64,000 bases of DNA from positions 149,275 through 213,274 of IMG/VR virus record IMGVR_UViG_3300007735_000804. One strand, 5' to 3'. Below are positions 8,493 through 51,027 of this stretch, one piece after another; within the stretch, counting starts at the first letter, position 1, and every line of letters begins with the position of its first letter. The position numbers and the translations under genes are program-made. The notes under the pieces are model-generated. The model had not been told where the DNA came from. It worked only from the letters and a program-made list of their open reading frames with translations, and made no database searches.

Positions 8493-8494
8493 AA

Positions 8495-8582
8495 TACGAG
8501 TGCCTGGATTCGAACCAGGTCAAAGCCGCTAATCTGGCGGAAAGAGTTTATAAGACTCCTCTGACTACCAAGTCTCACTCGC
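8495..8582 (-). tRNA. Non-canonical tRNA with UAU anticodon (Ile-AUA decoder?) and long variable arm
   Basis: GCGAGTG A GAC TTGGTA GTC AG AGGAGT CTTATAA ACTCTT T CCGC CAGATTA GCGG CTTTGA CCTGG TTCGAAT CCAGG CACTCGT A. This gives a 7-bp acceptor stem, canonical T arm, minimal D arm and an extra hairpin. Confidence 0.7.
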
Positions 8583-8592
8583 AATACAAATA

Positions 8593-9009: not shown

Positions 9010-9038
9010 ATTATAAAGGGTCTTGGGTCAGGTGTCAA
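9010..9038 (-). promoter_or_regulatory. Consensus sigma70 (early) promoter
   Basis: TTGACA-cctgacccaagaccctt (17 nt)-TATAAT on minus. Confidence 0.85.
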
Positions 9039-10523: not shown

Positions 10524-10552
10524 ATTATAAAATGTTTTGATTAATTTGTCAA
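10524..10552 (-). promoter_or_regulatory. Consensus sigma70 promoter
   Basis: TTGACA-aattaatcaaaacattt (17 nt)-TATAAT on minus, about 20 nt upstream of the Cys-rich ORF. Confidence 0.8.
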
Positions 10553-12460: not shown

Positions 12461-12931
12461 TTAAAAATAGTTTAAATTTATTACAACTCTAGCAGGAGCA
12501 TCCGTACAACTAGTACCACAGTGCTCTAAATTACTATCAAAAATAACAACTCTATTTGCAACACTATTTACCTTTTTTCCATTTTTAAATTTTGTATACC
12601 CATCGCAAGTATTAAGATAAAAGACCGCAGTTTTCATATTTGGAAAATCAATATGATAATCGTGTTCTTCTATTGTTTCTGTTCTTGGATTTAAATTTGC
12701 TTTAACTCTAACTAAAGATTGTACGTTGAGTTTTTCTCTCAAGCACAAAATATTTGAATACAAATGTGTTGGTTGATCGTATTGATAAAAGCAATGTGTA
12801 TTTTGATGGAATTTACTTCCAGTTGTAACAGATCCAAAAAACCAGGGAAAACTAGTCCCCATAACTAAACGACGAATCATATCAAATTGATTATGATTTA
12901 AAAAATCATCAATAATCTCAAAATTTGTCAT
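12461..12931 (-). CDS. 2OG-Fe(II) oxygenase (cyanophage type)
   Basis: HID motif, TAVFYLNTCDGYTKF, SVANRVVIFD, H.G, R.VINLNY. Confidence 0.8.
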   Translation of the reverse strand: MTNFEIIDDFLNHNQFDMIRRLVMGTSFPWFFGSVTTGSKFHQNTHCFYQYDQPTHLYSNILCLREKLNVQSLVRVKANLNPRTETIEEHDYHIDFPNMKTAVFYLNTCDGYTKFKNGKKVNSVANRVVIFDSNLEHCGTSCTDAPARVVINLNYF

Positions 12932-18699: not shown

Positions 18700-21600
18700 T
18701 TATCTCAACGCAAGTATAAGTGGGGTAACTTCTGCTTGTATTGCCTTACTAAAGTCTCTTCCTCTAATCGTTGCTGTTGGTTGATTGATTTGAAATCCTT
18801 CACCAATGTCAAAGTTTCCTTTTTGGTCAGTGCTTGTAAATGGTACTTGAGCTCCATCTAGTGCGACAATCTCATTCTGTTTTATTGGAACAGCGCCTTT
18901 AAAAGGTGTTGCTGTATTTATATCAACACCCGTACCAATATATTCAAAAGAGTGAGAGCTCGTAAGAATGCGACTAATTCTTTTAAGTGAAACTTCTTCT
19001 CCACCAAATAATTCATATGGGATGAATTCATTAAAAGTAACTGTTGTAATGCCAGTAACTGGTGTTGGGGCAGTTGCAACATCAACTGTATAGTAAATTG
19101 GTTGTGTTACTATTGTTGCCGTAGCACCTCCAGTGCCATCAATAAAAACTTCAAGATTTTGTGTTGGAAGATAATTTCTACCGCTACTAACAACATCAAT
19201 TGCAGTAATTGCACCAGAAACTTCATCAATAGTTGGACTTACTTCTGCAATAACTCCTTGGGGTCCTTTTGGTTGTTGAGTTAAATCGCCAGCATCCCGA
19301 ATAATTACAGTTGGTGGTGATGCTGCACTATAACCAGACCCACCATTAGTAACAATAATTTCTTGAACTTGCAACATAGGTTGTTGCAAAATTGTTGTTG
19401 ATAGACCTGTTGTTATAGCATCGGGATATCTACTCAAATCAATCTTAAAAAATAAAGCTTGCCCATCATAAGGTCTTCTTACGGTTCCTATTCCTCCGTT
19501 TGAATTATCTTTCATATTCGCAAAAGTAACTATATCACTTACAGCATCAACACCAGGTTGGGTTCTTGTAGGTGGATATGTACTTACAATACCAGTAAAC
19601 TCTGTAGATCCTAAACCTACAGCATATAGACCATAATTGCCAAAAGATGAGTTAGAGTTCGTAAGATCACAAGAACCTCCACTTGCGGCAAAAATACCAA
19701 TATCGCAGTTAATTGTAAAAATAGAAACCAATTGAGCATAACCATTGTTGGTAATGGATACTCCAATACCATTTTCATTATATTGCGTAAAAGAGTCACA
19801 TACCATTGATTTTAGATCGTTACCAATTGTTGCTGCTGTAGCATGATTTCCATCAATCTTCATACCAATACTCTTGGTCATGAAATTGGTACAGTTTCTT
19901 ACATAAGGACTTCTCCATCTACCACTAGATCCTTCTGTTGCTGGACCAGGTGATATATATCCAGATACGGCATAATTTGCTGGATTTGTAGGTGGAAATG
20001 CAACTGCACCACAACCAGTATGAGCAACTGCAACACTTGTACCTGCAAAATTAAGATTTTCAATTAGACATCCACGTCGAACATGAAAAACATCTTTTGT
20101 TGGATTATTTGGAATAATCGTAACCAGTCTTAAATCTTGTCCAGAAACTGAAACATCAGTCCTTAATCCAATTGGATTATTTTCTTGATATACTCCGGAG
20201 CGAACAAAAATAGTATCACCTTCTTGTGCAATTGAGGCAGCCGCACCTACAGTTCTTTTCGCATCACCTTCAAGATAACCAGTGTTTGCATCATTACCAT
20301 CCATTGTAACCCAAATAGCATTTTGAGTTTGTACTCCTGGCGGTCTCCAAGAAACACCAGACCCAACAGACGAAAGGCGATAATCAAATTTTCCTGATGC
20401 TGTGCTATTGTTTACATCAATTAAAGAAGAATCTAATTCTAAAGTCCCAACTAGTTTAGTATCTTCGCCTACATTTAAATTTTTCTCAATACCAACTCCA
20501 CCTTGAGTAATTAATGCTCCAGTATCTTTGCTTGTCGATTGTGTTGCACTATTAAATGTAACATCTCCATCAACATCTAAAATATCATTAAGTGTGGTGG
20601 CACCATCAACATTCAGAGTTGTATCTAGATCAGTTGCACCTTTGACATTTAAAGTGGTCTGAAGAACCGTAGCACCATCAACATTCAGAGTTGTATCTAG
20701 ATCAGTTGCACCTTTGACATTTAAAGTAGTTTGGAGTACTGTTGCACCATCAACATTCAGAGTTGTATCTAGATCAGTTGCACCTTTGACATTTAAAGTA
20801 GTTTGGAGTACTGTTGCACCATCAACATTCAGAGTTGTATCTAGATCAGTTGCACCTTTGACATTTAAGGATGATTGAAGAACTGTATTACCATCAACAT
20901 TCAAGGTCGCATCAAAATCAACTGCTCCAGTGGTGTGAAGAGTACCTCCAATGTCTAAAGTTGATGTTGGCGTATTACTTTGAATACCAACATTTGTCAT
21001 TCTGTAAATACTTCCAGTAGAATCAAATCCCCATAAGTCTTGAGTCTTAATATCTGCTATAAAATTGGGATTGGATGGATTTGGAATAGGTGTTATTGTT
21101 GTAGTTCCTATACCAAGACTGTTGACTTCTACAAAGTTTAATACTGTAAATGATTTTGCAATTCCAGTTACTGGTATATAAGTTCCATCATCTTGAACAA
21201 AAATACCATTGCTAAAATTTGGAGATGCTGCTATCCAACGAACTCCTCCAGAGTCCATGTTTAAGTAATAACCATTTATTCCTGGAGAATTTACAGAATC
21301 GTAAATGAAATCATCAATTTTTACACTTCCAGCTACATCAAGTTTTTGTTCTGGATTTGTGCTTCCTATTCCAATTCTATCACTAACAATCGCTGTTCCG
21401 ATTACATCCAATGTTGTTCTTGGATTAGTAGACGCAATGCCAACTCTACCATTATTTGCATTTGCTGTTAAAGTTGTTCCACCAACACCAACATCTAATC
21501 TTTCTCTTACCGTTAGAATTCCTACATTTACAGTTTTGGTAAAATAAACATCATCATAAAAATTTGCTGGTCCGTAAAAATTTGACGACCCTAAAATATC

Positions 21601-40089: not shown

Positions 40090-40324
40090 TTCTTTTACCT
40101 CGGGAAACTACTTTTCTTTTCCTAGACTTAAAGGAAAACTCAAAATAGATAGTGACTTCCCGATTCAGAAAGCAAACTATCTTCTCAAAAATAATGTGAA
40201 ACGGTTGAGTTTGCTTTCTTTTTCCTCCATATAGTATTAATTCAACACCACGATTTATGTGGTCCAAATTATTTATGTCAAGACTTGATGATTTGTTGTT
40301 CTTTGAGGAATTTGATTGTGTCAA
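40076..40324 (-). CDS. Hypothetical protein (start uncertain)
   Basis: ORF track; fills the gap between the glutaredoxin and membrane-protein genes. Confidence 0.5.
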   Translation of the reverse strand: MTQSNSSKNNKSSSLDINNLDHINRGVELILYGGKRKQTQPFHIIFEKIVCFLNREVTIYFEFSFKSRKRKVVSRGKRNVSS

Positions 40325-40520
40325 CGGATCCTCCTAGTTTTTTATCATCACAAATAACTTGTGGAAATGTAGAACCTTCACCAAATTCAGCATAAAACTC
40401 TTCTCTGGTAAAATGTTCATTAAGATTATAAACCACAAAGTTATTTCCTGTCAACTCTAATACTTGTTTGACTTTATAGCAATATGGACAATCTTCTTTT
40501 GAGTAAACTGTAAAATTCAT
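40278..40520 (-). CDS. Glutaredoxin (NrdC/NrdH-like)
   Basis: FTVYSKEDCPYCYKVK (CPYC) and STFPQV...LGG. Confidence 0.92.
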   Translation of the reverse strand: MNFTVYSKEDCPYCYKVKQVLELTGNNFVVYNLNEHFTREEFYAEFGEGSTFPQVICDDKKLGGSVDTIKFLKEQQIIKS

Positions 40521-40553
40521 AAGTAACAAAAGATTTATAGTAATTTATAATAG

Positions 40554-40580
40554 AAAAAAGGAGGGTATAAAACCCCCCCT
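40554..40580 (-). terminator. Rho-independent terminator closing the putative sRNA
   Basis: GGGGGGGU-UUUAU-ACCCUCCU followed by UUUUU on minus. Confidence 0.75.
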
Positions 40581-40654
40581 ATTAACCACCAACTCACCTC
40601 TTCACACCACCGAAGAGGGTCTTCACTCCCAAAGATACAAGGATTGTGAAGACC
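40554..40654 (-). ncRNA. Putative ~100-nt small RNA
   Basis: Lies between a perfect promoter and a terminator and has no credible ORF. Hairpin 1 is GGUCUUCAC/GUGAAGACC; hairpin 2 is CUCUUC/GAAGAG. Confidence 0.65.
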
Positions 40655-40659
40655 TTGTT

Positions 40660-40688
40660 ATTATAAAGGATTTATGTCTGTGTGTCAA
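40660..40688 (-). promoter_or_regulatory. Consensus sigma70 promoter of the putative sRNA
   Basis: TTGACA (40688-40683)-17 nt-TATAAT (40665-40660). Confidence 0.85.
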
Positions 40689-41130
40689 CAAGTCTTTCCC
40701 ATTCAGTTCCTTCTTGAACAACTCCATCACCATCACCATCTCTAGCATTTGGGTTATATCCATCAGCAATCATTTCTTCTTGAGTTTGTTCTACTGGTGC
40801 AGGTTCTTCTACCGGAACCCAAGGAAGAGGTAATGGAGTAATTGGAGGATTATACTTGCTTGCAATTTCATTTGCAAGAATTGTTTGTAAATATCCAATA
40901 TCAAGACTAGATTCTAACCAACCTACTACAATTTCTTCTGTTAGAGTTGAATAGTCGGCAAATGCTTCTGGATTTGGTTCTGGTAGGGGATATGAATTAG
41001 AAATTGATGCAGAAACACCATTCTCATCTTGCCCCGTAAGACCCCAATGAATCACTTTAACTACGTTAGTCAAACCATTTTCTGAAGGAGCACAATCTAA
41101 TTGAGAAATATTCCAAGTATAAGTAGTCAT
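40672..41130 (-). CDS. Conserved phage hypothetical protein of fibre-associated loci
   Basis: MTTYTWNISQLDC...VVKVIHW...F..YSTLTEE.V.GW; C-terminal DGDGDGVVQE. Confidence 0.75.
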   Translation of the reverse strand: MTTYTWNISQLDCAPSENGLTNVVKVIHWGLTGQDENGVSASISNSYPLPEPNPEAFADYSTLTEEIVVGWLESSLDIGYLQTILANEIASKYNPPITPLPLPWVPVEEPAPVEQTQEEMIADGYNPNARDGDGDGVVQEGTEWERLVDTQT

Positions 41131-41136
41131 TCTTCT

Positions 41137-41787
41137 TTAGCAGACACCATATTTAGCTTTGAGATTGTTACATTGCGTCTCTAAACTTTCAAATCCTTTG
41201 ACCGTCATCCAAGTTACCATTGAATATCGGTTGCCTTTGGTGACTGGTTCAACACCGTGACGATAATACCTGTTAGAAGGAAAGCATACTAAAAGACCTG
41301 GTTCAGGACGAATACGAATATGAAGATCTGGAAATACAAAATCACCACCTTCAAATTCATTATTGAGATATAAAACCATCGACAAATCACGGTCTACGGT
41401 CTTTCTCCAGAGTTGTGTTTGATCTGGTGCCGTCCATATACCCTCACCATCAATATGAGGTTGGTAGTGTCCTCCTACTCCATAACAAAGCAGTTGTGGA
41501 ACTTCACTACTATCCACTTCAAATTGATAAAAAGGATTGATGACTTGCTTGACAATATGATGCATCAGTTCGTTGACCTGTGGAAAGACAGGTTCAATTG
41601 GTGCGATTTGAGTATCTCTTGTTTTCTTATCAGTAATCCATTCAGTTTGTCTAGTTTGATTTGATTTATCTGGATCAAATACTGAAAGATCTTCTGTCTT
41701 TGAAGTTTTCATATGATGAACCAAAGCATCAATACCTTCTTGATTGATGACTTTTGGTGCAATCAAAACTTTGGATAATAAATTCAT
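41137..41787 (-). CDS. Prolyl-4-hydroxylase-like 2OG-Fe(II) oxygenase
   Basis: Y..GGHYQPHIDG...RDLSMVLYLNNEFEGGDF.F...PG.LVCFPS...HGVEPVTKGNRYSMVTW. Confidence 0.88.
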   Translation of the reverse strand: MNLLSKVLIAPKVINQEGIDALVHHMKTSKTEDLSVFDPDKSNQTRQTEWITDKKTRDTQIAPIEPVFPQVNELMHHIVKQVINPFYQFEVDSSEVPQLLCYGVGGHYQPHIDGEGIWTAPDQTQLWRKTVDRDLSMVLYLNNEFEGGDFVFPDLHIRIRPEPGLLVCFPSNRYYRHGVEPVTKGNRYSMVTWMTVKGFESLETQCNNLKAKYGVC

Positions 41788-41808: not shown

Positions 41809-41815
41809 TATTTAT
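41809..41815 (-). promoter_or_regulatory. Late promoter ATAAATA overlapping the propeller-gene stop
   Basis: tatttat on plus; the same context recurs at 49129-49135. Confidence 0.6.
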
Positions 41816-44019
41816 CTGGTGGTGTTTGAAGATGCTCCAAAATATCCTTTTGATGTAGTGATTGGTCCTCTTGGTGATGGTGTTGCAGAATCATTAGAGA
41901 AATTGATACGATCTACTCTCGTATCTCCTGCTGGGCCAGCACCTGCAAACCAACTATAATTAGAATTTCCTGTTGCTCCTCCAGCATGTCTTGTTATACT
42001 TAATGGTGCTCTTGGTGTTGCAGTCGATAAATCATTTGAAAAATCCATACGATCTACTGTTCCCACTTGCACTGAAGTAAATCCACCAGCAAACCATCCA
42101 TAGTTAGAATTTCCTGCTGCCATTATATAATATCTTGCTTGACTTAATGATCCTCTTGGTGATGCCTGAACTGAATCATTAGAGAAATCTATGCGATCTA
42201 CTATTTCTGTTGCTGCTAATGGAGATGGAATACGTCCACCACCAAACCAACCATAGTTAGAATTTCCTACTGCGCCCAAAGCATATCTTCCAGCACTTAA
42301 TGGTCCTCTAACAGATGCTGTTGAGGAATCATTGGAGAAATTGATACGATCTACTCTGCTATTTGTTGCTACTGGATTTCCACCACCAAACCAACCATAG
42401 TTAGAGTTTCCTGTTGCCGCACCTACTGCTCTTCCTGCAATTAATGGACCTCTAACTGATGCCGTTGCAGAATCATTAGAGAAATCTACACGATCTACTG
42501 TTGATACAAAAGAAGTTCCACCACCATACCAACCATAATTAGAGTTTCCTGTTGATGATGTATATCCTCTTGCAGAACTTAATGGTCCTCTCAGTGGTGC
42601 TGTTGCAGAATCATTAGAAAAATCTATACGGTCTACTGTTGATACTGGTCCTGGAGTTCCACCACCAAACCAACCATAAGACCCTGCTTTTTGTAAGCGA
42701 ATGCTTGAAGACTTTGCTTGTCCTGATGTTGCTGCAAATTTACCTCTTAAAATGGATGCTGATAATGGACCCCTAACTGATACTGCTACCGAATCATTCG
42801 AGAAATCTATGCGGTCTACTGCACTTAATGGACTTCCTGGTGGATTAAGTCCTGCACCAAACCAACCATAATTGGTGTTTCCTGTTGATGCCATAGCCCA
42901 TTTTGCGTCACTCAATGGACCTCTAGTAGTTAATGATCCTAAATCATTTGAAAAATCTATTCTTAAAATTGTGGAAACATATATTGACGGAAAAACGCCA
43001 AGATTTCCACCACCAAACCAACCATAGTTAGAGTTTCCTACTGCTCCTAAACCATATCTTCCAGAACTAATTGGACTTCTTGGTGATGCTGTTGAAGAAT
43101 CATTAGAGAAATCTATACGGTCTACTCTTGATAATGGTCCAGGAGTTCCACCAACCCACCAACCATAGTTAGAGTTTCCTGTTGCACTTGAATTATATCT
43201 TGCTGAAGTCAATGAACCCCTTACTAATGCTGTTCCAGAATCATTTGAAAAGTCTATACGGTCTACTGTTGATACTTTTGCTGGGAGACCACCACCACCA
43301 AACCAACCATAATTAGAGTTTCCTGTTGCACTCGGTCCTATATACTTTGCTGCACTTAATGTCCCTCTTACAGAGGTTGAACCAGAATCATTAGAAAAAT
43401 CTATACGTTCTACTGATGATAATGGTCCAGGAATTCCACCACCAAACCAACCATAGTTAGAGTTTCCTGTTGCTGCTAATAAACCTTTACTAGCACTTAA
43501 TGGTCCCCTAATATTTGCAGTTCCAGTATCATTCGAGAAATCTATACGATCTACATTAGATGCTGTTCCAGGAAATCCTTTACCAGCAAACCAACCATGA
43601 GTCTGAGCACTACTCCAAGTCGTATTTGTAACATTACCATCAGTCAGTAACTGAACATAACCAATCGTAGTTGCTCCAATACTTGCAGCAACAGGACCAA
43701 CATAACCAGTCGTTGCATAAGAAACTGTTGTGGTTCCTGCAAATCCTGTAACAACAAAAGTTCCATTGTATCCAGTGAGAGCAACTCCTGCTTGCGAAAT
43801 ACTTGAAACTCCAATAATTGCACCAGTATAAAAAGGAGTTGTTGTTAATCCAGCAGCATTTGAAAGATTAAGTGTAACTGTTCCACTGCTAAAAGAACCA
43901 CCAGTAATCGCAATACCTGCAGAAGATGATGCTGGATTAATATCAACTACCGAAACCGTAATCGGATTTGATTTGTTTAGAAAAATCGCATCAAGTCCAA
44001 ATACGTCTCCTGCTGGCAT
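41812..44019 (-). CDS. Kelch-like double beta-propeller protein C (12 blades) with an inserted N-terminal beta domain
   Basis: 12 repeats of GWFGGG-x-VDRIDFSNDS...RGPLS.AR...ATGNSNY in two sets of six, joined by TSGQAKSSSIRLQKAGSY. Confidence 0.8.
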   Translation of the reverse strand: MPAGDVFGLDAIFLNKSNPITVSVVDINPASSSAGIAITGGSFSSGTVTLNLSNAAGLTTTPFYTGAIIGVSSISQAGVALTGYNGTFVVTGFAGTTTVSYATTGYVGPVAASIGATTIGYVQLLTDGNVTNTTWSSAQTHGWFAGKGFPGTASNVDRIDFSNDTGTANIRGPLSASKGLLAATGNSNYGWFGGGIPGPLSSVERIDFSNDSGSTSVRGTLSAAKYIGPSATGNSNYGWFGGGGLPAKVSTVDRIDFSNDSGTALVRGSLTSARYNSSATGNSNYGWWVGGTPGPLSRVDRIDFSNDSSTASPRSPISSGRYGLGAVGNSNYGWFGGGNLGVFPSIYVSTILRIDFSNDLGSLTTRGPLSDAKWAMASTGNTNYGWFGAGLNPPGSPLSAVDRIDFSNDSVAVSVRGPLSASILRGKFAATSGQAKSSSIRLQKAGSYGWFGGGTPGPVSTVDRIDFSNDSATAPLRGPLSSARGYTSSTGNSNYGWYGGGTSFVSTVDRVDFSNDSATASVRGPLIAGRAVGAATGNSNYGWFGGGNPVATNSRVDRINFSNDSSTASVRGPLSAGRYALGAVGNSNYGWFGGGRIPSPLAATEIVDRIDFSNDSVQASPRGSLSQARYYIMAAGNSNYGWFAGGFTSVQVGTVDRMDFSNDLSTATPRAPLSITRHAGGATGNSNYSWFAGAGPAGDTRVDRINFSNDSATPSPRGPITTSKGYFGASSNTTR

Positions 44020-44030
44020 TTACTTTCTCC

Positions 44031-45764
44031 TTATGAGTTTCTGGATTCTAAAAGTTGTTGATGTTGTTCGGTTCCAGGTGCAAGCAAACCAAGGTCAGTA
44101 TTTGTGACTTCTTCAATACCACGAAGAACTTTCTCTTGCAGAGTATTCAGGAATCTTTCTGGATCATTAATCGCATCGGCAAGAGAACCATAACCATTTT
44201 TGATTCGGTTAGTATCATCACTTACAAGAGTAGGAGCAGTTCCTCTTCTCATTGAGTGAAGATTGCCGATGCTAATACCAGTCTTGGAACTTACCATTTC
44301 ATCCAGAGATTGCTCTGCAAAACGACGTTCCCAGTAAACATGATCTTCTGCTTCAAACTGTTCTCTGGTGACTGTCTTACCACCATTCAGTTCAATCAAA
44401 CGATTAATAATCTTATCAAAGAAATTCATTTGCTGAATACGATCACGAATCTCTAACTCACAAGATTTCAAATAGTTTTGAATCGATAGTGAATCCAAAT
44501 CGTGCCAGTAGAGTTTTGTTGAACCACCATTAGGTCCTGAAGTATGCCACTCTACAGGTTCATCAGTATTCTTACCTTTCCAACGATACTCAAACTCACG
44601 AACCTTTTCTTTCATTTCAATCAGTTTCTGCATATAACCTTCAGCAAGAATACGACGATTCTTAATTGCTGCCTGGAATGCTGCAGGAACTGTGTATTGC
44701 TCTAGTAGAAAGAACTTCTCAATCTGGAAATTAGTTCTTCCTTGTGCGAGTTCTTTATCTGCTTCTTCCCAACGAAGCACTTCTTGAAATGCCTGTTGTA
44801 AATATTCTTCGTTACTTACTGCTTCCTCTGGGGAAATAATTTGCAGTTGGTTACAATTTTCAGTCATAGTGTTTTTACTAAATGGTTCTAATGTTTGTTT
44901 CCAAACGTTTGCAATTTTTTTCCAATCATAAGTTTCAGTAGCATAATGTGAAACAGATTGTGAAATTTGGTCGTAGTATTGCCTGTCGTTATCAAAGAAA
45001 TATAATGCAGATTTACAGGCATCTATAAAGTTATTTAGGAAGTTATCTGTAACTTCATATCCTCTGGTGGTTCTTGTGCCCTCCATAGGAACGATGTTTG
45101 CAATCTCATTGGACACTTCTGGAAGTGCTCCAATATCTGTAAGAATTGGAAAGCATCCACACGCCATCGCTTCTGCTAATGAAACACAAAATGTCTCTTC
45201 CCAGATATTAGGATGAATGAAGAAAGCAGCATCTTGTAAGTGCTCTATCAGTTCTTCCTGGTCTACTGCTGGTGAGTAAATCACATTTGGAAGTGACTTA
45301 AGATACTCATAAAGTTCTGTGTATGGGTCTTCTTGAATATCATACAGATTCATCGCAGAGAAAATCTTGAATGTTGCCTCTGGAATATGAGGAATGATTT
45401 GTGCTAATACTTCAAGACCTTTATAAGGTATAGAAGTATAGATAAAGGTCTTTGATTTTTTGTTTGAGTATGTGAACTTCTTTGATACTCCTGTTGGTAT
45501 TGTGACGATTTTATGTTCTGGAATTTTATGATACTTAATAAACTGCTCTCGGCACCAGTTGGATGGAGAGACAATTAAATCACAAATTGAAAAATCAAAG
45601 TTGAGATAATGTGGTTGGTCGTATGAATGTTGAGTCCACAGAACTTTGACTGGTTTATTTGATTGTTGAAGTTCTTGTGGTAGATGAGAAACGATAATGT
45701 TTTCTGGAAACTTATAATATTCCTCAAGAAAGTAATAAGAACTTTCACTTGCTCCTGATTTCAT
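44031..45764 (-). CDS. GT-B (GT4-like) glycosyltransferase fused to a C-terminal helical domain
   Basis: MKSGASESS, YTSIPYKGLEVL, FFIHPNIWEETFCVSLAEAMACGCFPILTDIGALPE; C-terminal ~280-aa coiled-coil-rich domain. Confidence 0.85.
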   Translation of the reverse strand: MKSGASESSYYFLEEYYKFPENIIVSHLPQELQQSNKPVKVLWTQHSYDQPHYLNFDFSICDLIVSPSNWCREQFIKYHKIPEHKIVTIPTGVSKKFTYSNKKSKTFIYTSIPYKGLEVLAQIIPHIPEATFKIFSAMNLYDIQEDPYTELYEYLKSLPNVIYSPAVDQEELIEHLQDAAFFIHPNIWEETFCVSLAEAMACGCFPILTDIGALPEVSNEIANIVPMEGTRTTRGYEVTDNFLNNFIDACKSALYFFDNDRQYYDQISQSVSHYATETYDWKKIANVWKQTLEPFSKNTMTENCNQLQIISPEEAVSNEEYLQQAFQEVLRWEEADKELAQGRTNFQIEKFFLLEQYTVPAAFQAAIKNRRILAEGYMQKLIEMKEKVREFEYRWKGKNTDEPVEWHTSGPNGGSTKLYWHDLDSLSIQNYLKSCELEIRDRIQQMNFFDKIINRLIELNGGKTVTREQFEAEDHVYWERRFAEQSLDEMVSSKTGISIGNLHSMRRGTAPTLVSDDTNRIKNGYGSLADAINDPERFLNTLQEKVLRGIEEVTNTDLGLLAPGTEQHQQLLESRNS

Positions 45765-45769
45765 AATGT

Positions 45770-47668
45770 TTATTTGTTAGTGTTTGATGTTGCTGTTGGA
45801 TACAATATTCCAGGTGATGAGCTTAATCGACCTCTTGGTGATGCTGTTGCAGAATCATTAGAGAAATCTATACGATCTACTGTTGATTTAGGTACAGGTA
45901 GGCTAGGATTATAACCACCACCAAACCAACCATAGTTGGAGTTTCCTGTTGCTGCTAATTGAGATCTTGGAGAACTTAATGTTCCTCTTACTAATGCGGT
46001 AAGAGAATCATTAGAAAAATCTATACGGTCTACTGTTGCTAATGGTCCAGGATTACCACCACCAAACCAACCATAGTTGGAGTTTCCTGTTGCTGCTAAA
46101 TCATATCTTGCCAAACTTAATGGACCTCTTGGTGATGCCGTGGAGGAATCATTAGAGAAATTTATACGGTCTACTGTTGATACTATTACTGTTGGTGTTA
46201 CACCACCACCAAACCAACCATAGTTAGAGTTTCCTGTTGCTGCTATCAAAGATTTTCCTGCTGGAGCATTTAATGGACCTCTTGGTGATGCTGTTGCAGA
46301 ATCATTGGAGAAATCTATGCGGTCTACTGTTGATACTTGTGTTGGTGTTGCACCACCACCAAACCAACCATAACTAGAGTTTCCTGTTGCTGCCAAATAA
46401 AATCTTCCTAAACTTAATGAACCTCTAACGGATGCTGTTGCAGAATCATTAGAAAAATCTATACGGTCTACTCTTGATGCTGGTCCTCCTAGTGGAGCAG
46501 GAAGAAAACCAGCACCAAACCATCCATAGTTAGAGTTTCCTGTTGCCGCAAAACCATATCTAGCAAGACTTAATGGTCCCCTAACTGATGCTGTTGCAGA
46601 ATCATTAGAGAAATCTATACGATCTACTGTTGCTGCTGGTCCTGGTAATGCTAATCCACCACCAAACCAACCATAATTCCCTGCTTTTTGTCTGCGAATA
46701 TTGAGAACTCCTGAGGTTGAGGATGAACCGTATCGTACAGAACTTAATGGACCCCTAACTGATACCGTTGCAGAATCATTAGAGAAATCTATGCGGTCTA
46801 TTGTTGATAAATATGAGACTGGAAGATCAATATCATAAAAAACTCCTCCACCAAACCAACCATAGTTGGAGTTTGCTGATGCTGCTGTTCTAAGTCTTGC
46901 AGAACTCAATGGACCTCTTGGTGATGCTGTTACCAAATCATTAGAGAAATCTATACGATCTACTAATTGTATCGCGGTAATTCCAGAATAACCACCACCA
47001 AACCAACCATAATTAGAATTTCCTGTTGCACCCGAACCAAACCTCCCCGCACTTAATGGACCTCTTGGTGATGCTGTTGCAGAATCATTTGAAAAATCGA
47101 TACGATCTACTAGTGTAAATCCCGCAACACCACCACCAAACCAACCATAATTGGAATTTCCTGTTGCCGCTCCACCCGCTACATACGAATTTAATTGACC
47201 TCTAACTGGTGCTGTTGCTGCATCATTAGAAAAATCGATACGGTCTACTGTTGTTATTGACGAACTGCTAAACCAACCATAGTTAGAGTTTCCTGTTGCT
47301 CCTCCGTTATATCTTGCCGAATTTAATGGACCTCTAACAGATGCTGTGGAAGACTCATTTGAAAAATCGATACGGTCTACTATTGAATAATTAAAAAATC
47401 CTCCACCAAACCAACCGTAATTGGAATTTCCCGTAGCGGATAAATAACGTCTTGCTAAACTTAAAGGACCTCTAACTGATGCTGTTGCAGAATCATTGGA
47501 AAAATTTATACGTTCTACTGATGATACTGTGGGACCACCAGTATCACCACCACCAAACCAACCGTAATTCGCAACGGTTTCTTTATTCAACCAATCACCA
47601 GTCAGTCGTCCACTACGAACTTCTCCAAGTGTAAATGCTCCAAAGATATTGTTATTATTGATTGTCAT
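45770..47668 (-). CDS. Kelch-like double beta-propeller protein B (12 blades)
   Basis: 12 NYGWFGGG repeats in two sets of six, joined by TSGVLNIRRQKAGNY. Confidence 0.8.
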   Translation of the reverse strand: MTINNNNIFGAFTLGEVRSGRLTGDWLNKETVANYGWFGGGDTGGPTVSSVERINFSNDSATASVRGPLSLARRYLSATGNSNYGWFGGGFFNYSIVDRIDFSNESSTASVRGPLNSARYNGGATGNSNYGWFSSSSITTVDRIDFSNDAATAPVRGQLNSYVAGGAATGNSNYGWFGGGVAGFTLVDRIDFSNDSATASPRGPLSAGRFGSGATGNSNYGWFGGGYSGITAIQLVDRIDFSNDLVTASPRGPLSSARLRTAASANSNYGWFGGGVFYDIDLPVSYLSTIDRIDFSNDSATVSVRGPLSSVRYGSSSTSGVLNIRRQKAGNYGWFGGGLALPGPAATVDRIDFSNDSATASVRGPLSLARYGFAATGNSNYGWFGAGFLPAPLGGPASRVDRIDFSNDSATASVRGSLSLGRFYLAATGNSSYGWFGGGATPTQVSTVDRIDFSNDSATASPRGPLNAPAGKSLIAATGNSNYGWFGGGVTPTVIVSTVDRINFSNDSSTASPRGPLSLARYDLAATGNSNYGWFGGGNPGPLATVDRIDFSNDSLTALVRGTLSSPRSQLAATGNSNYGWFGGGYNPSLPVPKSTVDRIDFSNDSATASPRGRLSSSPGILYPTATSNTNK

Positions 47669-47672
47669 TTAC

Positions 47673-48503
47673 TTATATGAAAAGACTGATTGGTGGTTTT
47701 GCCTTTCTCCAAAATTCCATACCAGAATACTTATTCAATACATAATCACTTAAAACTTCTTCAGGTCTTTTAGAAGTTCTCTTTACTTGCTTACGAACTT
47801 CGTGCATATCACTCAATCCGTAAACCTCATTATCTCTCTCACGGTATTTATGATTCACATTACCAAAATCGTGTTGATATTCAGGAATCTCTAAAAACTG
47901 ATAGACCTTACGCATCGTTTCTTCTGGACGGTTCACAAGGTCATTATACTCAATAATATGCATATACTTCTCACAACCCTTCCTGAACCCCTCTCCAAAG
48001 GCATATAAGGACTGGTCTACAATACCTTCAGGACACATTAGATAATCGCACCGAGTATCATCATTCACTTCATATCCATAATCTCTTAATGCCTTATCAA
48101 CAAATGAAACTTGATTGGAATTGCGATGAATCATTTGAATAAAAGACGCAAGAATCTCCAATACATCTCTTACGGGACACAGAATCTTTGGGTTCTTTGT
48201 GAGATATTCTTGTGCTCTATCAACATTATTCGGCCAAGCACGACACTTATCAACTACAATTGGTTTATCAACATCACTATAATAGTTCTCAATCACACTT
48301 GAAATAATCTTATGATGCTGTTCTGGTTTTGGATACGCAAGTGCCTGCTCTGATCCCTCAAAGTATTGCTCGGTATAATACATAATCTCCAACACAGGAG
48401 AAATAGCACCACAATGAATATCAGGATTTTGATTAAGTATTGCAGAAAGTAAAGTAGATCCAGAACGAGGCAATCCACTTTCAAAAAAATATGTCTTATG
48501 CAT
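47673..48503 (-). CDS. Sulfotransferase (family 3-like)
   Basis: SGLPRSGSTLL..ILNQNP PAPS-binding loop, DKCRAW, VRDVLEILASF, IEYNDLV..PEETM. Confidence 0.85.
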   Translation of the reverse strand: MHKTYFFESGLPRSGSTLLSAILNQNPDIHCGAISPVLEIMYYTEQYFEGSEQALAYPKPEQHHKIISSVIENYYSDVDKPIVVDKCRAWPNNVDRAQEYLTKNPKILCPVRDVLEILASFIQMIHRNSNQVSFVDKALRDYGYEVNDDTRCDYLMCPEGIVDQSLYAFGEGFRKGCEKYMHIIEYNDLVNRPEETMRKVYQFLEIPEYQHDFGNVNHKYRERDNEVYGLSDMHEVRKQVKRTSKRPEEVLSDYVLNKYSGMEFWRKAKPPISLFI

Positions 48504-49107
48504 TATTAAAAAAGAACAACTGAACTAATCTACCATTTTCTAGACAATCTCCAAAGTTTGCTCCGTGCGAATGCCAGAGTTTTGGATCAAAGATCACTGC
48601 TCTATTATACTTCATATTTGCCAAACAGTATCTCTCCCACTTGGAACGATCTAAACCATCACCATAAACAATACCTTGTCTTATCTCCTCATAAGAAGTA
48701 TAACCAAACCAACCTGCTTCGTGTTGTTCGGGGCATCTTTCCCATCCTAATTTCTTATGCTTCCAGAATGATGTTCCTGCCTCATCAATACACTGGTGAG
48801 GAAGATTCATATAAAGAACACAACCCCAGTCCCAGATTGGATCAATATGAATATCTTGTTGGAATGTATCTGCTTCTAATGATAATCTAAAATCTCCATG
48901 ATTGCCACAATCAGCAGGAACTAAATGTCTTCCAAGAAGATTCTCAAACTTATCGTGAATCTCTTGATTATAAAAAGTTCCGTTGGAGTTTCTACCTGGA
49001 TAAGTATAACCGTCTTGTGGTTGTGGATACTCTAGGTTCAATGCATACTGACGAACTTCATATGGATTCTCATAGAAGTTATCAACAATAATAATGTTCT
49101 GCTTCAT
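48496..49107 (-). CDS. 2OG-Fe(II) oxygenase-like protein (DUF6445-like)
   Basis: IIVDNFYENPYEVRQYAL...YPGRNS...IHID...LYMN...AGTSFW...YNRAVIFD..LWHSHG...RLVQLFFF. Confidence 0.78.
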   Translation of the reverse strand: MKQNIIIVDNFYENPYEVRQYALNLEYPQPQDGYTYPGRNSNGTFYNQEIHDKFENLLGRHLVPADCGNHGDFRLSLEADTFQQDIHIDPIWDWGCVLYMNLPHQCIDEAGTSFWKHKKLGWERCPEQHEAGWFGYTSYEEIRQGIVYGDGLDRSKWERYCLANMKYNRAVIFDPKLWHSHGANFGDCLENGRLVQLFFFNNA

Positions 49108-49128
49108 TAGTAATAATGTAGTTGGAAG

Positions 49129-49135
49129 TATTTAT
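49129..49135 (-). promoter_or_regulatory. Late promoter ATAAATA overlapping the propeller-gene stop
   Basis: tatttat on plus, duplicating the context at 41809. Confidence 0.6.
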
Positions 49136-51027
49136 GTTGGGGTGTTTGAAGATGCCGCTAAATATCCTCTTGCTGCACTTAATGAGCCTCTAACTGATGC
49201 TGATACAGAATCATTCGAAAAATCTATGCGGTCTACTGTTGCTAATACCAATACGAATGGAACATTAGTATTTCCACCACCAAACCATCCATAGTTAGAG
49301 TTTCCTGTTGCTGTTAAATATGCTCTTTGATAACTTAATATACCTCTTGGTGATGCTATTGCTAAATCATTAGAAAAATTTACTCTGTCTATTAGAGATT
49401 TATAAGCAGGTGATGTGCCAGTTAAACTTCCACCACCAAACCAACCATAGTTAGAGTTTCCTGTTGCTGCTAAACCATTTCTTTGTAAACTTAATGAACC
49501 TCTTGGGGATAATGAGTTAGAATCATTAGAGAAATCAATACGGTCTACTATTGCCACTGGGGAAGGTGATGGACCACCACCACCAAACCATCCATAGTTA
49601 GAGTTTCCTGTTGCTGCTGCTGCATATCTTGCAGCACTTAATGAACTTCTTGGTGATGCTGTTGATAAATCATTAGAAAAATTTATACGATCTACTGTTG
49701 CTGAAACTATTGTTGGAGTAGCACCACCACCAAACCAACCATAGTTAGAGTTTCCTGTTGCTACTAAACGCCATCTGGATAAACTTAATGGACCTCTTGG
49801 TGATGCTGTTGCAGAATCATTGGAGAAATCTATACGGTCTACTATTGATACTGTTGTTGATGGTGGTGAAATATATCCGCCACCAAACCAACCATAGTTA
49901 GAGTTTCCTGTTGCTGCTAACCCATATCTTCCTACTGGAGCATTTAATAAACCTCTTGATGATGCTGTTGGTAAATCATTAGAGAAATCTATACGATCTA
50001 CTGTTGAATATGATGAGGGAGAGTTTAAACCTCCACCAAACCAACCATAAGACCCTGCTTTTTGTAGTTTAATTGCTGGTCCTTTTGCTTGTCCTGATGT
50101 TGATCCAAAACCATATCTTGCTGAACTTAATGAACCTCTTACGGATGCTGTTGAGGAATCATTAGAAAAATCTATACGGTCTACTCTTGATAATGAACCA
50201 GGAAAACCTCCACCAAACCAACCATAGTTAGAGTTTCCTGTTGCTGCTAAACCATATCTTGCTGAACTTAATGATCCTCTAACGGATGCTGTTACAGAAT
50301 CATTGGAGAAATCTATGCGATTTACTATTGAATATGGTGATTGAAATTGAAAATAACCACCACCGAACCAACCATAGTTGGAGTTTCCTGTTGCTGCTAA
50401 ATTATATGTTGCTAAACTTAATGGACCTCTAACGGATGTTGTTCCAGAATCATTTGAAAAATCTATACGGTCTACTGTTGATAATGGACCAGGAGCACCA
50501 CCACCAAACCAACCATAGTTAGAGTTTCCTGTTGCTGTTAATTGTTGTCTTGCTAAACTTAATGGTCCTCTTGGTGATGCCGTAGAAGAATCATTAGAGA
50601 AATCGATACGTTCTACTTTTGATACTCCTGGAAATCCACCACCACCAAACCAACCATAGTTAGAGTTTCCTGTTGCTGCTAAACCATATCTTGCTGAACT
50701 TAATGGACCTCTCGGCGATGATGTTCCAGAATCATTGGAGAAATCTATACGGTCTACTACTGCCAATGGTCCTGGAGGTCCTGGAGATTTACCACCACCA
50801 AACCAACCATAATTAGAGTTTCCTGTTGCTGCTAAAGCACCTCTTGCTAAACTTAATGGACCTCTTACTGATGCCGTGGAGGAATCATTAGAGAAATCTA
50901 TACGGTCTACTGTTGATAATGGACCAGGGATGCTACCACCAAACCAACCGTGAGTATTTTGAGAACTCATCAACTCGATTCTCTTCAGTTTATAAGCAAC
51001 CTGTAATCCAAATACTCCAATTGCCAT
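49132..51027 (-). CDS. Kelch-like double beta-propeller protein A (12 blades)
   Basis: 12 GWFGGG repeats in two sets of six, joined by TSGQAKGPAIKLQKAGSY. Confidence 0.8.
   Translation of the reverse strand: MAIGVFGLQVAYKLKRIELMSSQNTHGWFGGSIPGPLSTVDRIDFSNDSSTASVRGPLSLARGALAATGNSNYGWFGGGKSPGPPGPLAVVDRIDFSNDSGTSSPRGPLSSARYGLAATGNSNYGWFGGGGFPGVSKVERIDFSNDSSTASPRGPLSLARQQLTATGNSNYGWFGGGAPGPLSTVDRIDFSNDSGTTSVRGPLSLATYNLAATGNSNYGWFGGGYFQFQSPYSIVNRIDFSNDSVTASVRGSLSSARYGLAATGNSNYGWFGGGFPGSLSRVDRIDFSNDSSTASVRGSLSSARYGFGSTSGQAKGPAIKLQKAGSYGWFGGGLNSPSSYSTVDRIDFSNDLPTASSRGLLNAPVGRYGLAATGNSNYGWFGGGYISPPSTTVSIVDRIDFSNDSATASPRGPLSLSRWRLVATGNSNYGWFGGGATPTIVSATVDRINFSNDLSTASPRSSLSAARYAAAATGNSNYGWFGGGGPSPSPVAIVDRIDFSNDSNSLSPRGSLSLQRNGLAATGNSNYGWFGGGSLTGTSPAYKSLIDRVNFSNDLAIASPRGILSYQRAYLTATGNSNYGWFGGGNTNVPFVLVLATVDRIDFSNDSVSASVRGSLSAARGYLAASSNTPT

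What the first reader, a model, noticed from the sequence alone, without database searches (positions are those of the whole stretch)
40554..40688. Stand-alone ~100-nt phage sRNA with a segment complementary to the cyanobacterial Yfr1 motif
Seen in sequence: a perfect TTGACA-17-TATAAT promoter, a predicted +1 at the first G of a 9-bp stem (GGUCUUCAC/GUGAAGACC), a second hairpin (CUCUUC-GGUGGUGU-GAAGAG), a single-stranded GUGAGUUGGUGGUU stretch and an intrinsic terminator, with no credible ORF. Established: Yfr1 is an abundant cyanobacterial sRNA with the ultraconserved motif ACUCCUCACAC, usually followed by CA, and marine homologues target outer-membrane porin mRNAs. The phage RNA contains UGGUGUGAAGAG, the reverse complement of CUCCUCACACCA except at one position, with the GGUGGUGU part exposed in a loop. 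It also carries GAGGUGA, complementary to the 16S anti-SD. Inference: an early phage-encoded sponge or anti-sRNA against Yfr1, or an SD-decoy RNA.
Basis: partly seen in the sequence, partly recalled or inferred. Interest (0 to 1): 0.78.

Follow-up and report, generated by a model that had tools for sequence, protein, structure and literature searches.

The report
Conserved small RNA gene in freshwater cyanophages
Just upstream of the glutaredoxin gene this cyanophage carries a roughly 100-base structured non-coding RNA with its own promoter and terminator; the RNA is conserved in well over a hundred uncultured freshwater cyanophages and matches no curated RNA family, but the proposed role as a decoy for the host RNA Yfr1 does not hold across the family.

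Summary
On the minus strand, a perfect TTGACA-17-TATAAT promoter (40688-40660) is followed by two adjacent hairpins, a G/U-rich single strand and a strong intrinsic terminator (to about 40552). There is no ORF. nrdC starts 32 nt further on, behind its own TATAAAT boxes.

It belongs to a large RNA family with no curated Rfam match. S-SRM01 is the only GenBank phage that carries it. Base pairing is kept in 98.4% of cells, and 6 of 8 pairs of hairpin 2 show compensatory changes.

That covariation undercuts the Yfr1-sponge idea, because the "anti-Yfr1" string is the 3' arm of hairpin 2 and changes together with its partner arm. It is present in only 7 of 30 distinct RNAs found through nrdC alone. 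Real Cyanobium/Synechococcus Yfr1 pairs no better than shuffled Yfr1, except for one allele. What stays constant is GUGGUG in the loop and GUUGGUGGU in the linker.

Most likely reading: an early, stand-alone, trans-acting phage sRNA with G/U-rich seeds and an unknown target. A cis-acting leader or attenuator of nrdC is the main rival. No discrete transcript was shown.

The parts
40683..40688 (-). -35 hexamer TTGACA; it lies inside the last codons of the upstream DUF7936 gene, whose stop TAA is at 40674-40672
   Evidence: TTGAC is kept in the family members aligned, while the sequence 5' of it is unrelated between loci
40660..40665 (-). -10 hexamer TATAAT after a 17-nt spacer; the spacer end CCTTTATAAT is shared across the family
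40618..40654 (-). Stem-loop 1, starting at the predicted +1 (G 40654). Outer 9-bp helix, AA bulge, inner 4-bp helix, conserved loop UGUAUCUUU (40639-40631).
   Evidence: fold; helices 1 and 2 are paired in 99.7-99.8% of cells, with compensatory changes at 3 pairs; loop conservation
40598..40617 (-). Hairpin 2: CUCUUCG / loop GUGGUG (40610-40605) / UGAAGAG.
   Evidence: 6 of 8 stem pairs covary and 99.8% of cells are paired; loop GUGGUG is present in 53/56 and 29/30 RNAs of the unbiased sets
40581..40597 (-). Single-stranded linker GUGAGUUGGUGGUUAAU; the conserved core GUUGGUGGU is at 40593-40585 and UGGU is the invariant part
   Evidence: unpaired in the MFE and consensus structures; core present in 44/56 and 26/30 of the unbiased sets
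40552..40580 (-). Intrinsic terminator: AGGGGGGGU-UUUAU-ACCCUCCUU followed by a U-run
   Evidence: the stem sequence differs between relatives but pairing is kept (95.3% of cells); many G-U pairs fix the strand as minus
40533..40549 (-). Two TATAAAT boxes resembling the T4 late promoter, between the terminator and nrdC. These are nrdC's own promoter-like element and are not part of the RNA.
   Evidence: read; TATAAATTA is also present before nrdC in relatives that lack the RNA; the late-promoter reading rests on T4 knowledge
40278..40520 (-). nrdC (glutaredoxin), the downstream neighbour, ATG at 40520
   Evidence: Pfam PF00462, E 6e-12; annotated as nrdC/glutaredoxin in related phages

Best explanation
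This is a gene for a structured non-coding RNA of about 100 nt. It is the window's copy of a family found in S-SRM01-like freshwater cyanomyophages.

Proposed steps:
1. Host RNA polymerase starts at a consensus sigma-70-type early promoter.
2. The transcript begins with a 5'-terminal stem-loop, which would be expected to stabilise it.
3. A second hairpin displays an invariant GUGGUG loop.
4. A single-stranded linker carries GUUGGUGGU.
5. The transcript ends at a strong intrinsic terminator, 32 nt before nrdC. nrdC has its own TATAAAT promoter-like box.

I think it most likely acts in trans. The two exposed G/U-rich, UGGU-containing motifs would base-pair with C/A-rich single-stranded stretches of one or more host or phage RNAs, in the way the G/U-rich seed of GcvB does.

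Yfr1 and Yfr10 (...CACACC...) are possible partners for the window's own subtype, but they are not the target that shaped the family.

Shown: the anatomy, the conservation, the RNA-level covariation, the strand, and the single copy in the 64-kb window.
Inferred: the transcription start, the discrete transcript, early timing, trans action, and the nature of the target.
For: - Perfect promoter and terminator.
- Fold z -3.35.
- Homologue in S-SRM01 with compensatory changes.
- 83 matches in A3, 82 of them full-length family members: 98.4% of cells paired, 11 pairs with double changes, 0 of 500 shuffles reach this, and slid controls give 58-71%.
- Conservation begins exactly at the -35 box, while upstream genes differ between loci.
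- Abundant G-U pairs fix the strand.
- The loop and linker motifs are kept in sets retrieved without constraining them.
- About half of close nrdC relatives lack the element and have a promoter directly before nrdC, so it behaves as a separable gene.
- In some loci a homing-endonuclease-like ORF sits between the element and nrdC.
- A similar perfect promoter precedes two small ORFs and the phage tRNA cluster.
- No ORF.
- No Rfam match.
Against: - No transcript evidence. The only RNA-library hit is a 265-nt, depth-2 contig of a relative that runs on beyond both ends of the element.
- The promoter-structured RNA-terminator-gene layout is also that of a leader or attenuator, and wherever the element exists it sits upstream of nrdC.
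- No target was identified. The window itself has no convincing complementary site at a gene start.
- G-rich seeds pair with many C-rich host sequences, so raw pairing energies discriminate poorly.
Confidence: 0.45

Rival explanations
1. A cis-acting 5' leader. The early promoter really serves nrdC and the genes downstream of it. The structured RNA plus terminator would be an attenuator, or a put-like processive antitermination element, that sets how much transcription reads through. It might respond to a ligand that binds the G/U-rich strand and frees the pyrimidine arm of hairpin 2 to pair with the terminator's 5' arm.
For: - The layout promoter, two adjacent hairpins, terminator, gene matches this model, and the element always lies upstream of nrdC.
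- Relatives without the element have a sigma-70 promoter directly before nrdC, so nrdC is normally promoter-proximal.
- An alternative helix between the hairpin 2 5' arm and the terminator 5' arm can form in 91.7% of cells, against 65-81% in slid registers.
- The RNA-library contig of a relative continues past the terminator.
Against: - The alternative helix is no better than column shuffles (90.5%). It is a generic pyrimidine-arm/purine-arm match.
- nrdC keeps its own conserved TATAAATTA box with or without the element.
- Half of close nrdC relatives do without the element.
- A homing-endonuclease-like gene can be inserted between the element and nrdC.
- No Rfam riboswitch, T-box or leader model matches, even at E up to 10.
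Confidence: 0.27
2. One reading: a sponge or anti-sRNA against host Yfr1 (and Yfr10), functionally mimicking the 5' motif of Yfr2. Pairing would start at the hairpin 2 loop and extend into the 3' arm.
For: - In the window subtype there are 11 of 12 complementary bases.
- One relative (L135) carries the perfect GUGUGAGGAG.
- The hairpin 2 site is the best, or among the 14 best, of 42,648 windows in the 64-kb window for pairing with Yfr1.
- Cofold ddG is -11 to -16 kcal/mol. With the Yfr1 allele ...CACACCACCCC it beats 60 of 60 shuffled controls.
- The Yfr1 site lies in the top 0.02-1.4% of host windows for the window subtype.
- Yfr2 is a documented natural Yfr1/Yfr10 partner with a similarly imperfect match (PMC6778093).
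Against: - The core is kept in only 7 of 30 unbiased family members.
- It is a stem arm that covaries with its partner, whereas Yfr1's motif was identical in every host genome sampled.
- Shuffled Yfr1 pairs as well as real Yfr1 (window z -0.68; family z -1.9 to +1.3).
- With the commonest Cyanobium alleles, 27-28% of controls do as well.
- For the commonest RNA variant the Yfr1 site is unremarkable (top 1.7-12%).
- The same 12-mer occurs elsewhere in the window.
- No Yfr2/Cyano-1 Rfam match.
Confidence: 0.12
3. A decoy that binds something other than a long RNA: either a protein recognising GGUGG/UGGU motifs shown once in a loop and once in a single strand (CsrB/RsmZ-style titration), or the single-stranded ACCA-3' ends of tRNAs (the complement of UGGU, as in the T-box UGGN-NCCA contact).
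For: - UGGU is the invariant core of both motifs, and all but the degenerate copy (29 of 30 distinct RNAs) carry at least two UGGU.
- A weak RsmZ-like Rfam hit, 15.5 bits, E 0.34.
- The linker GGUGGUA matches the T-box core as I recall it.
Against: - The RsmZ hit is far below its gathering score of 44, and there is no T-box hit.
- No specifier-like element and no T-box-type antiterminator bulge.
- No candidate binding protein was identified.
- CsrA-type proteins are not a known feature of cyanobacteria (background knowledge).
Confidence: 0.1
4. Mainly a DNA-level element: a promoter cassette that drives gene shuffling (like the PeSL cassettes of T4-type phages), a Chi-like recombination hotspot (GTTGGTGG), or an R-loop-type replication origin (promoter, G-rich transcript, A/T-rich stretch).
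For: - The left edge of the element is a breakpoint of gene order (X4 joint).
- A truncated second copy in L038 is fused at GTGGTGG to a glycine-rich ORF.
- Many loci have an inverted repeat TGTCAA-cccc-TTGACA over the -35 box.
Against: - Compensatory changes with many G-U pairs point to selection on an RNA of one strand.
- There is a single copy in the window.
- There is no GC-skew inflection at 40.6 kb.
- The Chi and origin readings rest on recalled resemblance only.
Confidence: 0.06

Closest known systems
Yfr2 family (Rfam Cyano-1), cyanobacterial sRNAs that bind Yfr1 and Yfr10
   Same: A purine/G-U-rich motif that is nearly, but not perfectly, complementary to ACUCCUCACAC, in an abundant terminator-ended sRNA. 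In the window subtype GGUGUGAAGAGG resembles the Yfr2 5' ends GGUGUGAGGA and GUGUGUAGGAGAGG (primers).
   Different: In Yfr2 the motif is at a free 5' end, followed by a long hairpin with a conserved 12-nt loop. Here it is the loop plus 3' arm of a short hairpin, and it is not conserved in the family. There is no Rfam match at E up to 10. It is phage-encoded.
GcvB (enterobacterial sRNA, G/U-rich region R1)
   Same: Conserved single-stranded G/U-rich seeds, which in GcvB pair with C/A-rich elements of many mRNAs. This is the mechanism I propose for the phage RNA.
   Different: No sequence or structural homology. GcvB works with Hfq, and cyanobacterial Hfq is not known to act that way. Targets here are unknown. 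The comparison rests on background knowledge.
Prophage-encoded anti-sRNAs and sRNAs (AgvB/AsxR of EHEC, DicF, IpeX) and cyanophage CfrI
   Same: Phage-borne small RNAs with their own promoters that act on host or phage RNAs. AgvB is the precedent for a phage 'anti-sRNA'.
   Different: Those come from temperate coliphages or prophages, or, for CfrI, are a cis-antisense RNA to psbA/F-CphI in S-PM2 (PMC12197685). This one is an intergenic RNA of lytic T4-like cyanophages with no known target.
HK022 put RNA and other cis-acting antitermination or leader RNAs
   Same: Two directly adjacent stem-loops just downstream of an early promoter and upstream of a terminator.
   Different: No sequence similarity. 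put acts on RNA polymerase in cis, and no read-through was shown here. The comparison is from memory.
PeSL (promoter-early stem-loop) cassettes of T4-type phages
   Same: Consensus early promoters with associated hairpins at the borders of shuffled genes. The truncated copy in L038 suggests such shuffling.
   Different: PeSLs are short, multi-copy and not known to encode a conserved structured RNA. This element is about 140 bp, has one copy in the window, and shows RNA covariation.

Membership tests
Any curated RNA family (Rfam 15) | Score at or above the family's gathering threshold | tested here: not met
   Only two tRNAs pass in the whole window. In 40300-40900 at E up to 10 there are only chance-level hits; the best is PrrB_RsmZ at 15.5 bits against a threshold of 44.
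Stand-alone bacterial/phage sRNA gene | Own promoter directly upstream | tested here: met
   12/12 TTGACA-17-TATAAT, conserved in the family, and conservation starts at the -35 box.
Stand-alone bacterial/phage sRNA gene | Own intrinsic terminator giving a defined 3' end | tested here: met
   9-bp G+C-rich stem plus U-run; pairing is kept although stem sequences differ.
Stand-alone bacterial/phage sRNA gene | A discrete transcript of the predicted size accumulates | tested here: inconclusive
   Only Logan contigs of metagenomic runs could be laid. There was one depth-2 contig from an RNA library, and it is not bounded by the element.
Structured RNA (as opposed to chance hairpins) | Compensatory base changes that keep the helices in homologues | tested here: met
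   A3: 98.4% of cells paired, 150 cells with double changes against 46 in shuffles, hairpin 2 covaries at 6 of 8 pairs.
Anti-Yfr1 sponge (functional class of Yfr2) | The segment complementary to ACUCCUCACAC is conserved among homologues | tested here: not met
   GUGUGA[AG]GAG is present in 7 of 30 distinct RNAs of the nrdC-anchored set. The commonest core is GUGGUGGGAGAGG.
Anti-Yfr1 sponge (functional class of Yfr2) | Pairing with host Yfr1 better than composition alone gives | tested here: not met
   Against shuffled Yfr1, z ranges from -1.9 to +1.3. Cofold beats its controls only for the window subtype with one allele.
Anti-Yfr1 sponge (functional class of Yfr2) | Physical duplex with Yfr1 and de-repression of Yfr1 targets | not testable with these tools
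   Needs gel-shift, pull-down or RIL-seq experiments in an infected host.
Yfr2 / Cyano-1 | Single-stranded 5' motif plus a long hairpin with a conserved 12-nt loop (PMC2662882) | tested here: not met
   The architecture differs and there is no Rfam hit.
Riboswitch / transcription attenuator | A conserved antiterminator helix mutually exclusive with the terminator | tested here: inconclusive
   A candidate helix forms in 91.7% of cells, but shuffles give 90.5%.
Riboswitch / transcription attenuator | Obligate association with the regulated gene | tested here: inconclusive
   The element is always upstream of nrdC where present, but 35 of 75 close nrdC loci gave no match (a few of them have too little upstream DNA to tell), and another gene can lie between the element and nrdC.
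T-box | Specifier loop, T-box sequence in an antiterminator bulge, match to RF00230 | tested here: not met
   No hit at E up to 10. Only the UGGU/GGUGGUA resemblance exists, and that is recalled from memory.

The most novel reading that the evidence does not exclude
The three invariant UGGU motifs make this phage RNA a capture device for C/A-rich single strands. The partner could be host Yfr1/Yfr10 around CACACC(AC), or the ACCA-3' ends of uncharged tRNAs. Binding the partner to the G/U-rich strand would free the pyrimidine arm of hairpin 2 to disrupt the terminator. One element would then be both a sponge and a trans-RNA-sensing switch for nrdC and the early genes downstream.
Probability: 0.1. 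Interest if true: 0.85.

Novelty: new variant of a known kind. Interest (0 to 1): 0.55.

Why it matters
The non-coding RNAs reported so far in cyanophages are tRNAs, a cis-antisense RNA (CfrI) and a few cis-regulatory motifs. In the library I could search I found no report of a promoter-to-terminator sRNA gene family in lytic T4-like cyanophages.

If this RNA is made early and acts in trans, it would be a way for freshwater cyanophages to reprogram picocyanobacteria after transcription. S-SRM01 and its Synechococcus host offer a cultured system to test it. The covariance model built here would let the element be annotated in metagenomes.

The practical lesson is that the attractive Yfr1 match belongs to one subtype's stem arm and is not the conserved function.

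Tried and rejected
- Rfam at gathering thresholds and at E up to 10: nothing relevant.
- Transcript evidence: both run searches and the single read-laying run gave only low-depth metagenome contigs, which was inconclusive.
- Yfr1 hypothesis. I fetched real Yfr1 genes with a yfr1-motif plus trxA pattern. I then tested duplex energy against shuffled Yfr1, cofold with intramolecular structure, and rank among host windows. It is rejected as a family-wide function.
- SD decoy: GAGGUGA is not conserved and is partly paired.
- Targets inside the phage. ACCACCAAC-like sites are about 9 times over-represented, but on the plus strand. They are the antisense of glycine-rich repeat genes, so the mRNAs carry the same sense as the sRNA. 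The one perfect minus-strand site lies deep inside a 1009-aa ORF. The complement of loop 1 is not enriched.
- Mini-ORF or leader peptide (GUG-AGU-UGG-UGG): the frame is broken by 1-nt insertions in several members, and the start lies in the hairpin 2 stem. This rests on inspection.
- Pseudoknot between the loops: no complementary partner was found in the RNA by inspection.
- Replication origin: no skew inflection.
- Marine cyanomyophages: the spacers before nrdC are 0-93 nt and there is no model hit.
- Looking for a phage thioredoxin to reach host trxA loci: none found.

Full report
THE OBSERVATION

The feature lies on the minus strand. Read 5' to 3' it runs as follows:
- TTGACA (40688-40683), a 17-nt spacer, TATAAT (40665-40660).
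- Six bases further, a G (40654) opens stem-loop 1 (40654-40618): a 9-bp outer helix GGUCUUCAC/GUGAAGACC, an AA bulge, a 4-bp inner helix and the loop UGUAUCUUU.
- Hairpin 2 follows without a spacer (40617-40598): CUCUUCG, loop GUGGUG, UGAAGAG.
- Then 17 unpaired bases, GUGAGUUGGUGGUUAAU (40597-40581).
- Then a terminator, AGGGGGGGU-UUUAU-ACCCUCCUU plus a U-run, ending about 40552.

The 103-nt RNA folds at -39.5 kcal/mol, z -3.35 against dinucleotide shuffles. It has no AUG and no credible ORF.

The upstream gene (DUF7936, 152 aa) stops at 40672, so the -35 box lies in its last codons. The downstream gene is nrdC/glutaredoxin, with its ATG at 40520. Two TATAAAT boxes (40549-40543 and 40539-40533) lie between the terminator and nrdC.

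Perfect TTGACA-N16-18-TATAAT promoters occur four times in the window against 0.18 expected. All four are on the gene-sense strand, and one precedes two small ORFs and the tRNA cluster.

A CONSERVED RNA FAMILY

The closest cultured phage is the freshwater Synechococcus phage S-SRM01 (Kyanoviridae, about 81% DNA identity). Its unannotated spacer before the glutaredoxin gene holds the same element, with compensatory changes in stem-loop 1 and a completely different but still pairing terminator stem. It is the only GenBank phage among 50,697 records that has the element.

In IMG/VR the family is large.
- The 21-nt core gave 19 loci, one of them identical to the window over the stretch compared.
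- Covariance models built from the alignments (R1, R2) gave 82 full-length matches (plus one truncated copy), 57 matches and 40 matches in three locus sets that partly overlap.

Conservation begins exactly at the -35 box. The DNA to its left belongs to unrelated genes in different contigs.

On 76 distinct sequences the consensus structure is paired in 98.4% of cells. Eleven pairs show changes on both sides, no column shuffle out of 500 reaches the observed values, and slid registers give 58-71% pairing.

Hairpin 2 is the clearest case. Its stem occurs as CCUCUUC/GAAGAGG, CCUCUC/GAGAGG, CUCCCC/GGGGAG, CUUCCC/GGGAAG, CUUCUUC/GAAGAAG and CUUUC/GAAAG. Frequent G-U pairs fix the transcribed strand as the promoter's strand.

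No Rfam family matches. I found no description in the papers I could search.

WHAT IS CONSERVED AS SEQUENCE

I used two sets that did not constrain the motifs. One was anchored on stem-loop 1. The other was retrieved only through NrdC protein similarity.
- The loop GUGGUG is present in 53/56 and 29/30 distinct RNAs.
- The linker GUUGGUGGU is present in 44/56 and 26/30.
- The variants (GAUGGUGGU, AAGGUGGU, GUUAAUGGU, loop GUGGUU or GUGGUA) all keep UGGU.
- The loop of stem-loop 1 (UGUAnCUUU) is also conserved.

The commonest family core is GUGGUGGGAGAGGUGAGUUGGUGGU.

TESTING THE YFR1 IDEA WITH REAL YFR1 GENES

Yfr1 sits between guaB and trxA in most cyanobacteria (PMC2190773). A pattern joining the Yfr1 motif to the thioredoxin WCGPC codons fetched 120 cyanobacterial loci, including freshwater Cyanobium, Vulcanococcus and Synechococcus.

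Their Yfr1 reads GUGGGGGCUACGGCUCGCAC-ACUCCUCACAC-C(C/A/U)(C/A)CC...GGCCCGG. The 3' flank is variable: CCCCCGG is commonest, and a few have CACCCCG.

Results:
- Within the 64-kb window, the hairpin 2 site ranks first to fourteenth of 42,648 windows for pairing with these Yfr1 single strands.
- Shuffled Yfr1 20-mers pair just as well. The window's z is -0.68, and across 22 family subtypes z runs from -1.9 to +1.3.
- With intramolecular structure included (cofold), the window RNA gains -11 to -16 kcal/mol. It beats shuffled controls only with the allele CACACCACCCC (0 of 60 controls). With the common alleles 27-28% of controls do as well. The other subfamilies are not better than controls.
- Among 100,692 windows of Cyanobium-type DNA, the Yfr1 site is in the top 0.02-1.4% for the window subtype but only the top 1.7-12% for the commonest subtype.
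- The 12-mer TGGTGTGAAGAG also occurs at 20931-20942.

The complementarity is real for this subtype. It is largely a G-rich against C-rich composition effect, and it sits in a stem arm that evolves by compensatory change. Yfr1's motif was identical in every host genome sampled. A dedicated Yfr1 sponge should hold that string fixed, and the family does not.

STAND-ALONE RNA OR LEADER?

For an independent gene:
- A consensus promoter and a strong terminator bracket about 100 nt.
- nrdC keeps its own TATAAATTA box whether or not the element is present.
- 35 of 75 close NrdC loci gave no model match. A few of these have too little upstream DNA to tell. Of the 28 examined, several have a sigma-70 promoter or only the TATAAAT box directly before nrdC, and one carries a degenerate remnant.
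- In several contigs a 212-aa ORF that looks like a homing endonuclease (weak AP2 hit) lies between the element and nrdC.
- Marine cyanomyophages have spacers of 0-93 nt and no match.

For a leader:
- The layout itself fits, and the element is always upstream of nrdC.
- The pyrimidine arm of hairpin 2 could pair with the purine arm of the terminator in 91.7% of cells. Column shuffles give 90.5%, so this is not evidence.

The only RNA-library signal is a depth-2 contig of a relative that extends beyond both ends. Transcription, 5' and 3' ends and timing therefore remain inferred.

MECHANISM

I commit to an early, stable, trans-acting sRNA whose two exposed UGGU-rich motifs pair with C/A-rich RNA, a GcvB-like logic. 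Confidence is about 0.45 for the whole chain. It is about 0.9 that this is a selected structured RNA.

Rivals are a cis leader or antiterminator (0.27), the Yfr1/Yfr10 sponge for this subtype (0.12), a protein or tRNA-end decoy (0.10), and a DNA-level cassette (0.06). These weights are judgement, not computation.

I found no target in the window. The striking excess of ACCACCAAC-like sites (119 against 13 expected) is on the plus strand. It is the antisense of WFGGG-repeat genes, so it is not a target set.

NOVELTY

This is an RNA family with no curated Rfam match and no description that I could find. It belongs to a known general kind, phage-borne small RNAs. It is conserved with covariation, and one cultured phage-host pair is available for testing. 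The specific and more exciting claim, a Yfr1 sponge, is not supported for the family.

Noticed in passing
window 40425-40454 (-), 9010-9038 (-), 10524-10552 (-): Three more perfect TTGACA-N16-18-TATAAT promoters (4 in the window against 0.18 expected). One lies inside the nrdC coding sequence. One precedes two small ORFs and the tRNA cluster and shares the spacer end CCCTTTATAAT with the sRNA promoter.
   Followed up: partly
window, plus strand, for example 42238-50943: ACCACCAAC-like 9-mers with up to 1 mismatch occur 119 times against 13.4 expected. They are the antisense of repeated WFGGG-type glycine-rich motifs in large minus-strand genes such as the 735-aa ORF at 41812-44019.
   Followed up: partly
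L038 about 12583-12690 (-): A truncated second copy of the element: promoter, stem-loop 1 and ...CUCUGUGGUGG, fused at GTGGTGG to glycine-rich sequence. This suggests recombination at the G/T-rich motif and reuse of the promoter plus 5' hairpin.
   Followed up: partly
L217 546-1184 (also L007, L030, L242, L243): A 212-aa ORF with a weak AP2-domain hit, probably a free-standing homing endonuclease, is inserted between the element with its TATAAAT box and nrdC.
   Followed up: partly
L001 about 2935-2965 and many IMG/VR loci: An inverted repeat TGTCAA-cccc-TTGACA overlaps the -35 box in many relatives but not in the window. It is reminiscent of the promoter-early stem-loop cassettes of T4-type phages.
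   Followed up: no
window 8494-8583 (-): ARAGORN calls a 90-nt tRNA-Ile(TAT), which Rfam's tRNA model does not report at its gathering score. The neighbouring tRNA-Met gene encodes ...ACCACCA, while tRNA-Leu has no encoded CCA.
   Followed up: no
window 40673-41172: A contig in run X4 joins 40673 to 41172 with 46 other letters in between. A relative therefore lacks the DUF7936 gene, which confirms that the element's left edge is a gene-order breakpoint.
   Followed up: no
   Followed up: no
L272-L391 (cyanobacterial yfr1-trxA loci): The 3' flank of the Yfr1 motif is lineage-specific. It is ACUAAAU or ACCAAAU in high-light Prochlorococcus, CACACUCCGCC in many freshwater and filamentous lineages, and CCCCCGG, CCUCCGG or CACCCCG in Cyanobium/Synechococcus. 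The 11-mer itself is fixed by the search pattern.
   Followed up: partly
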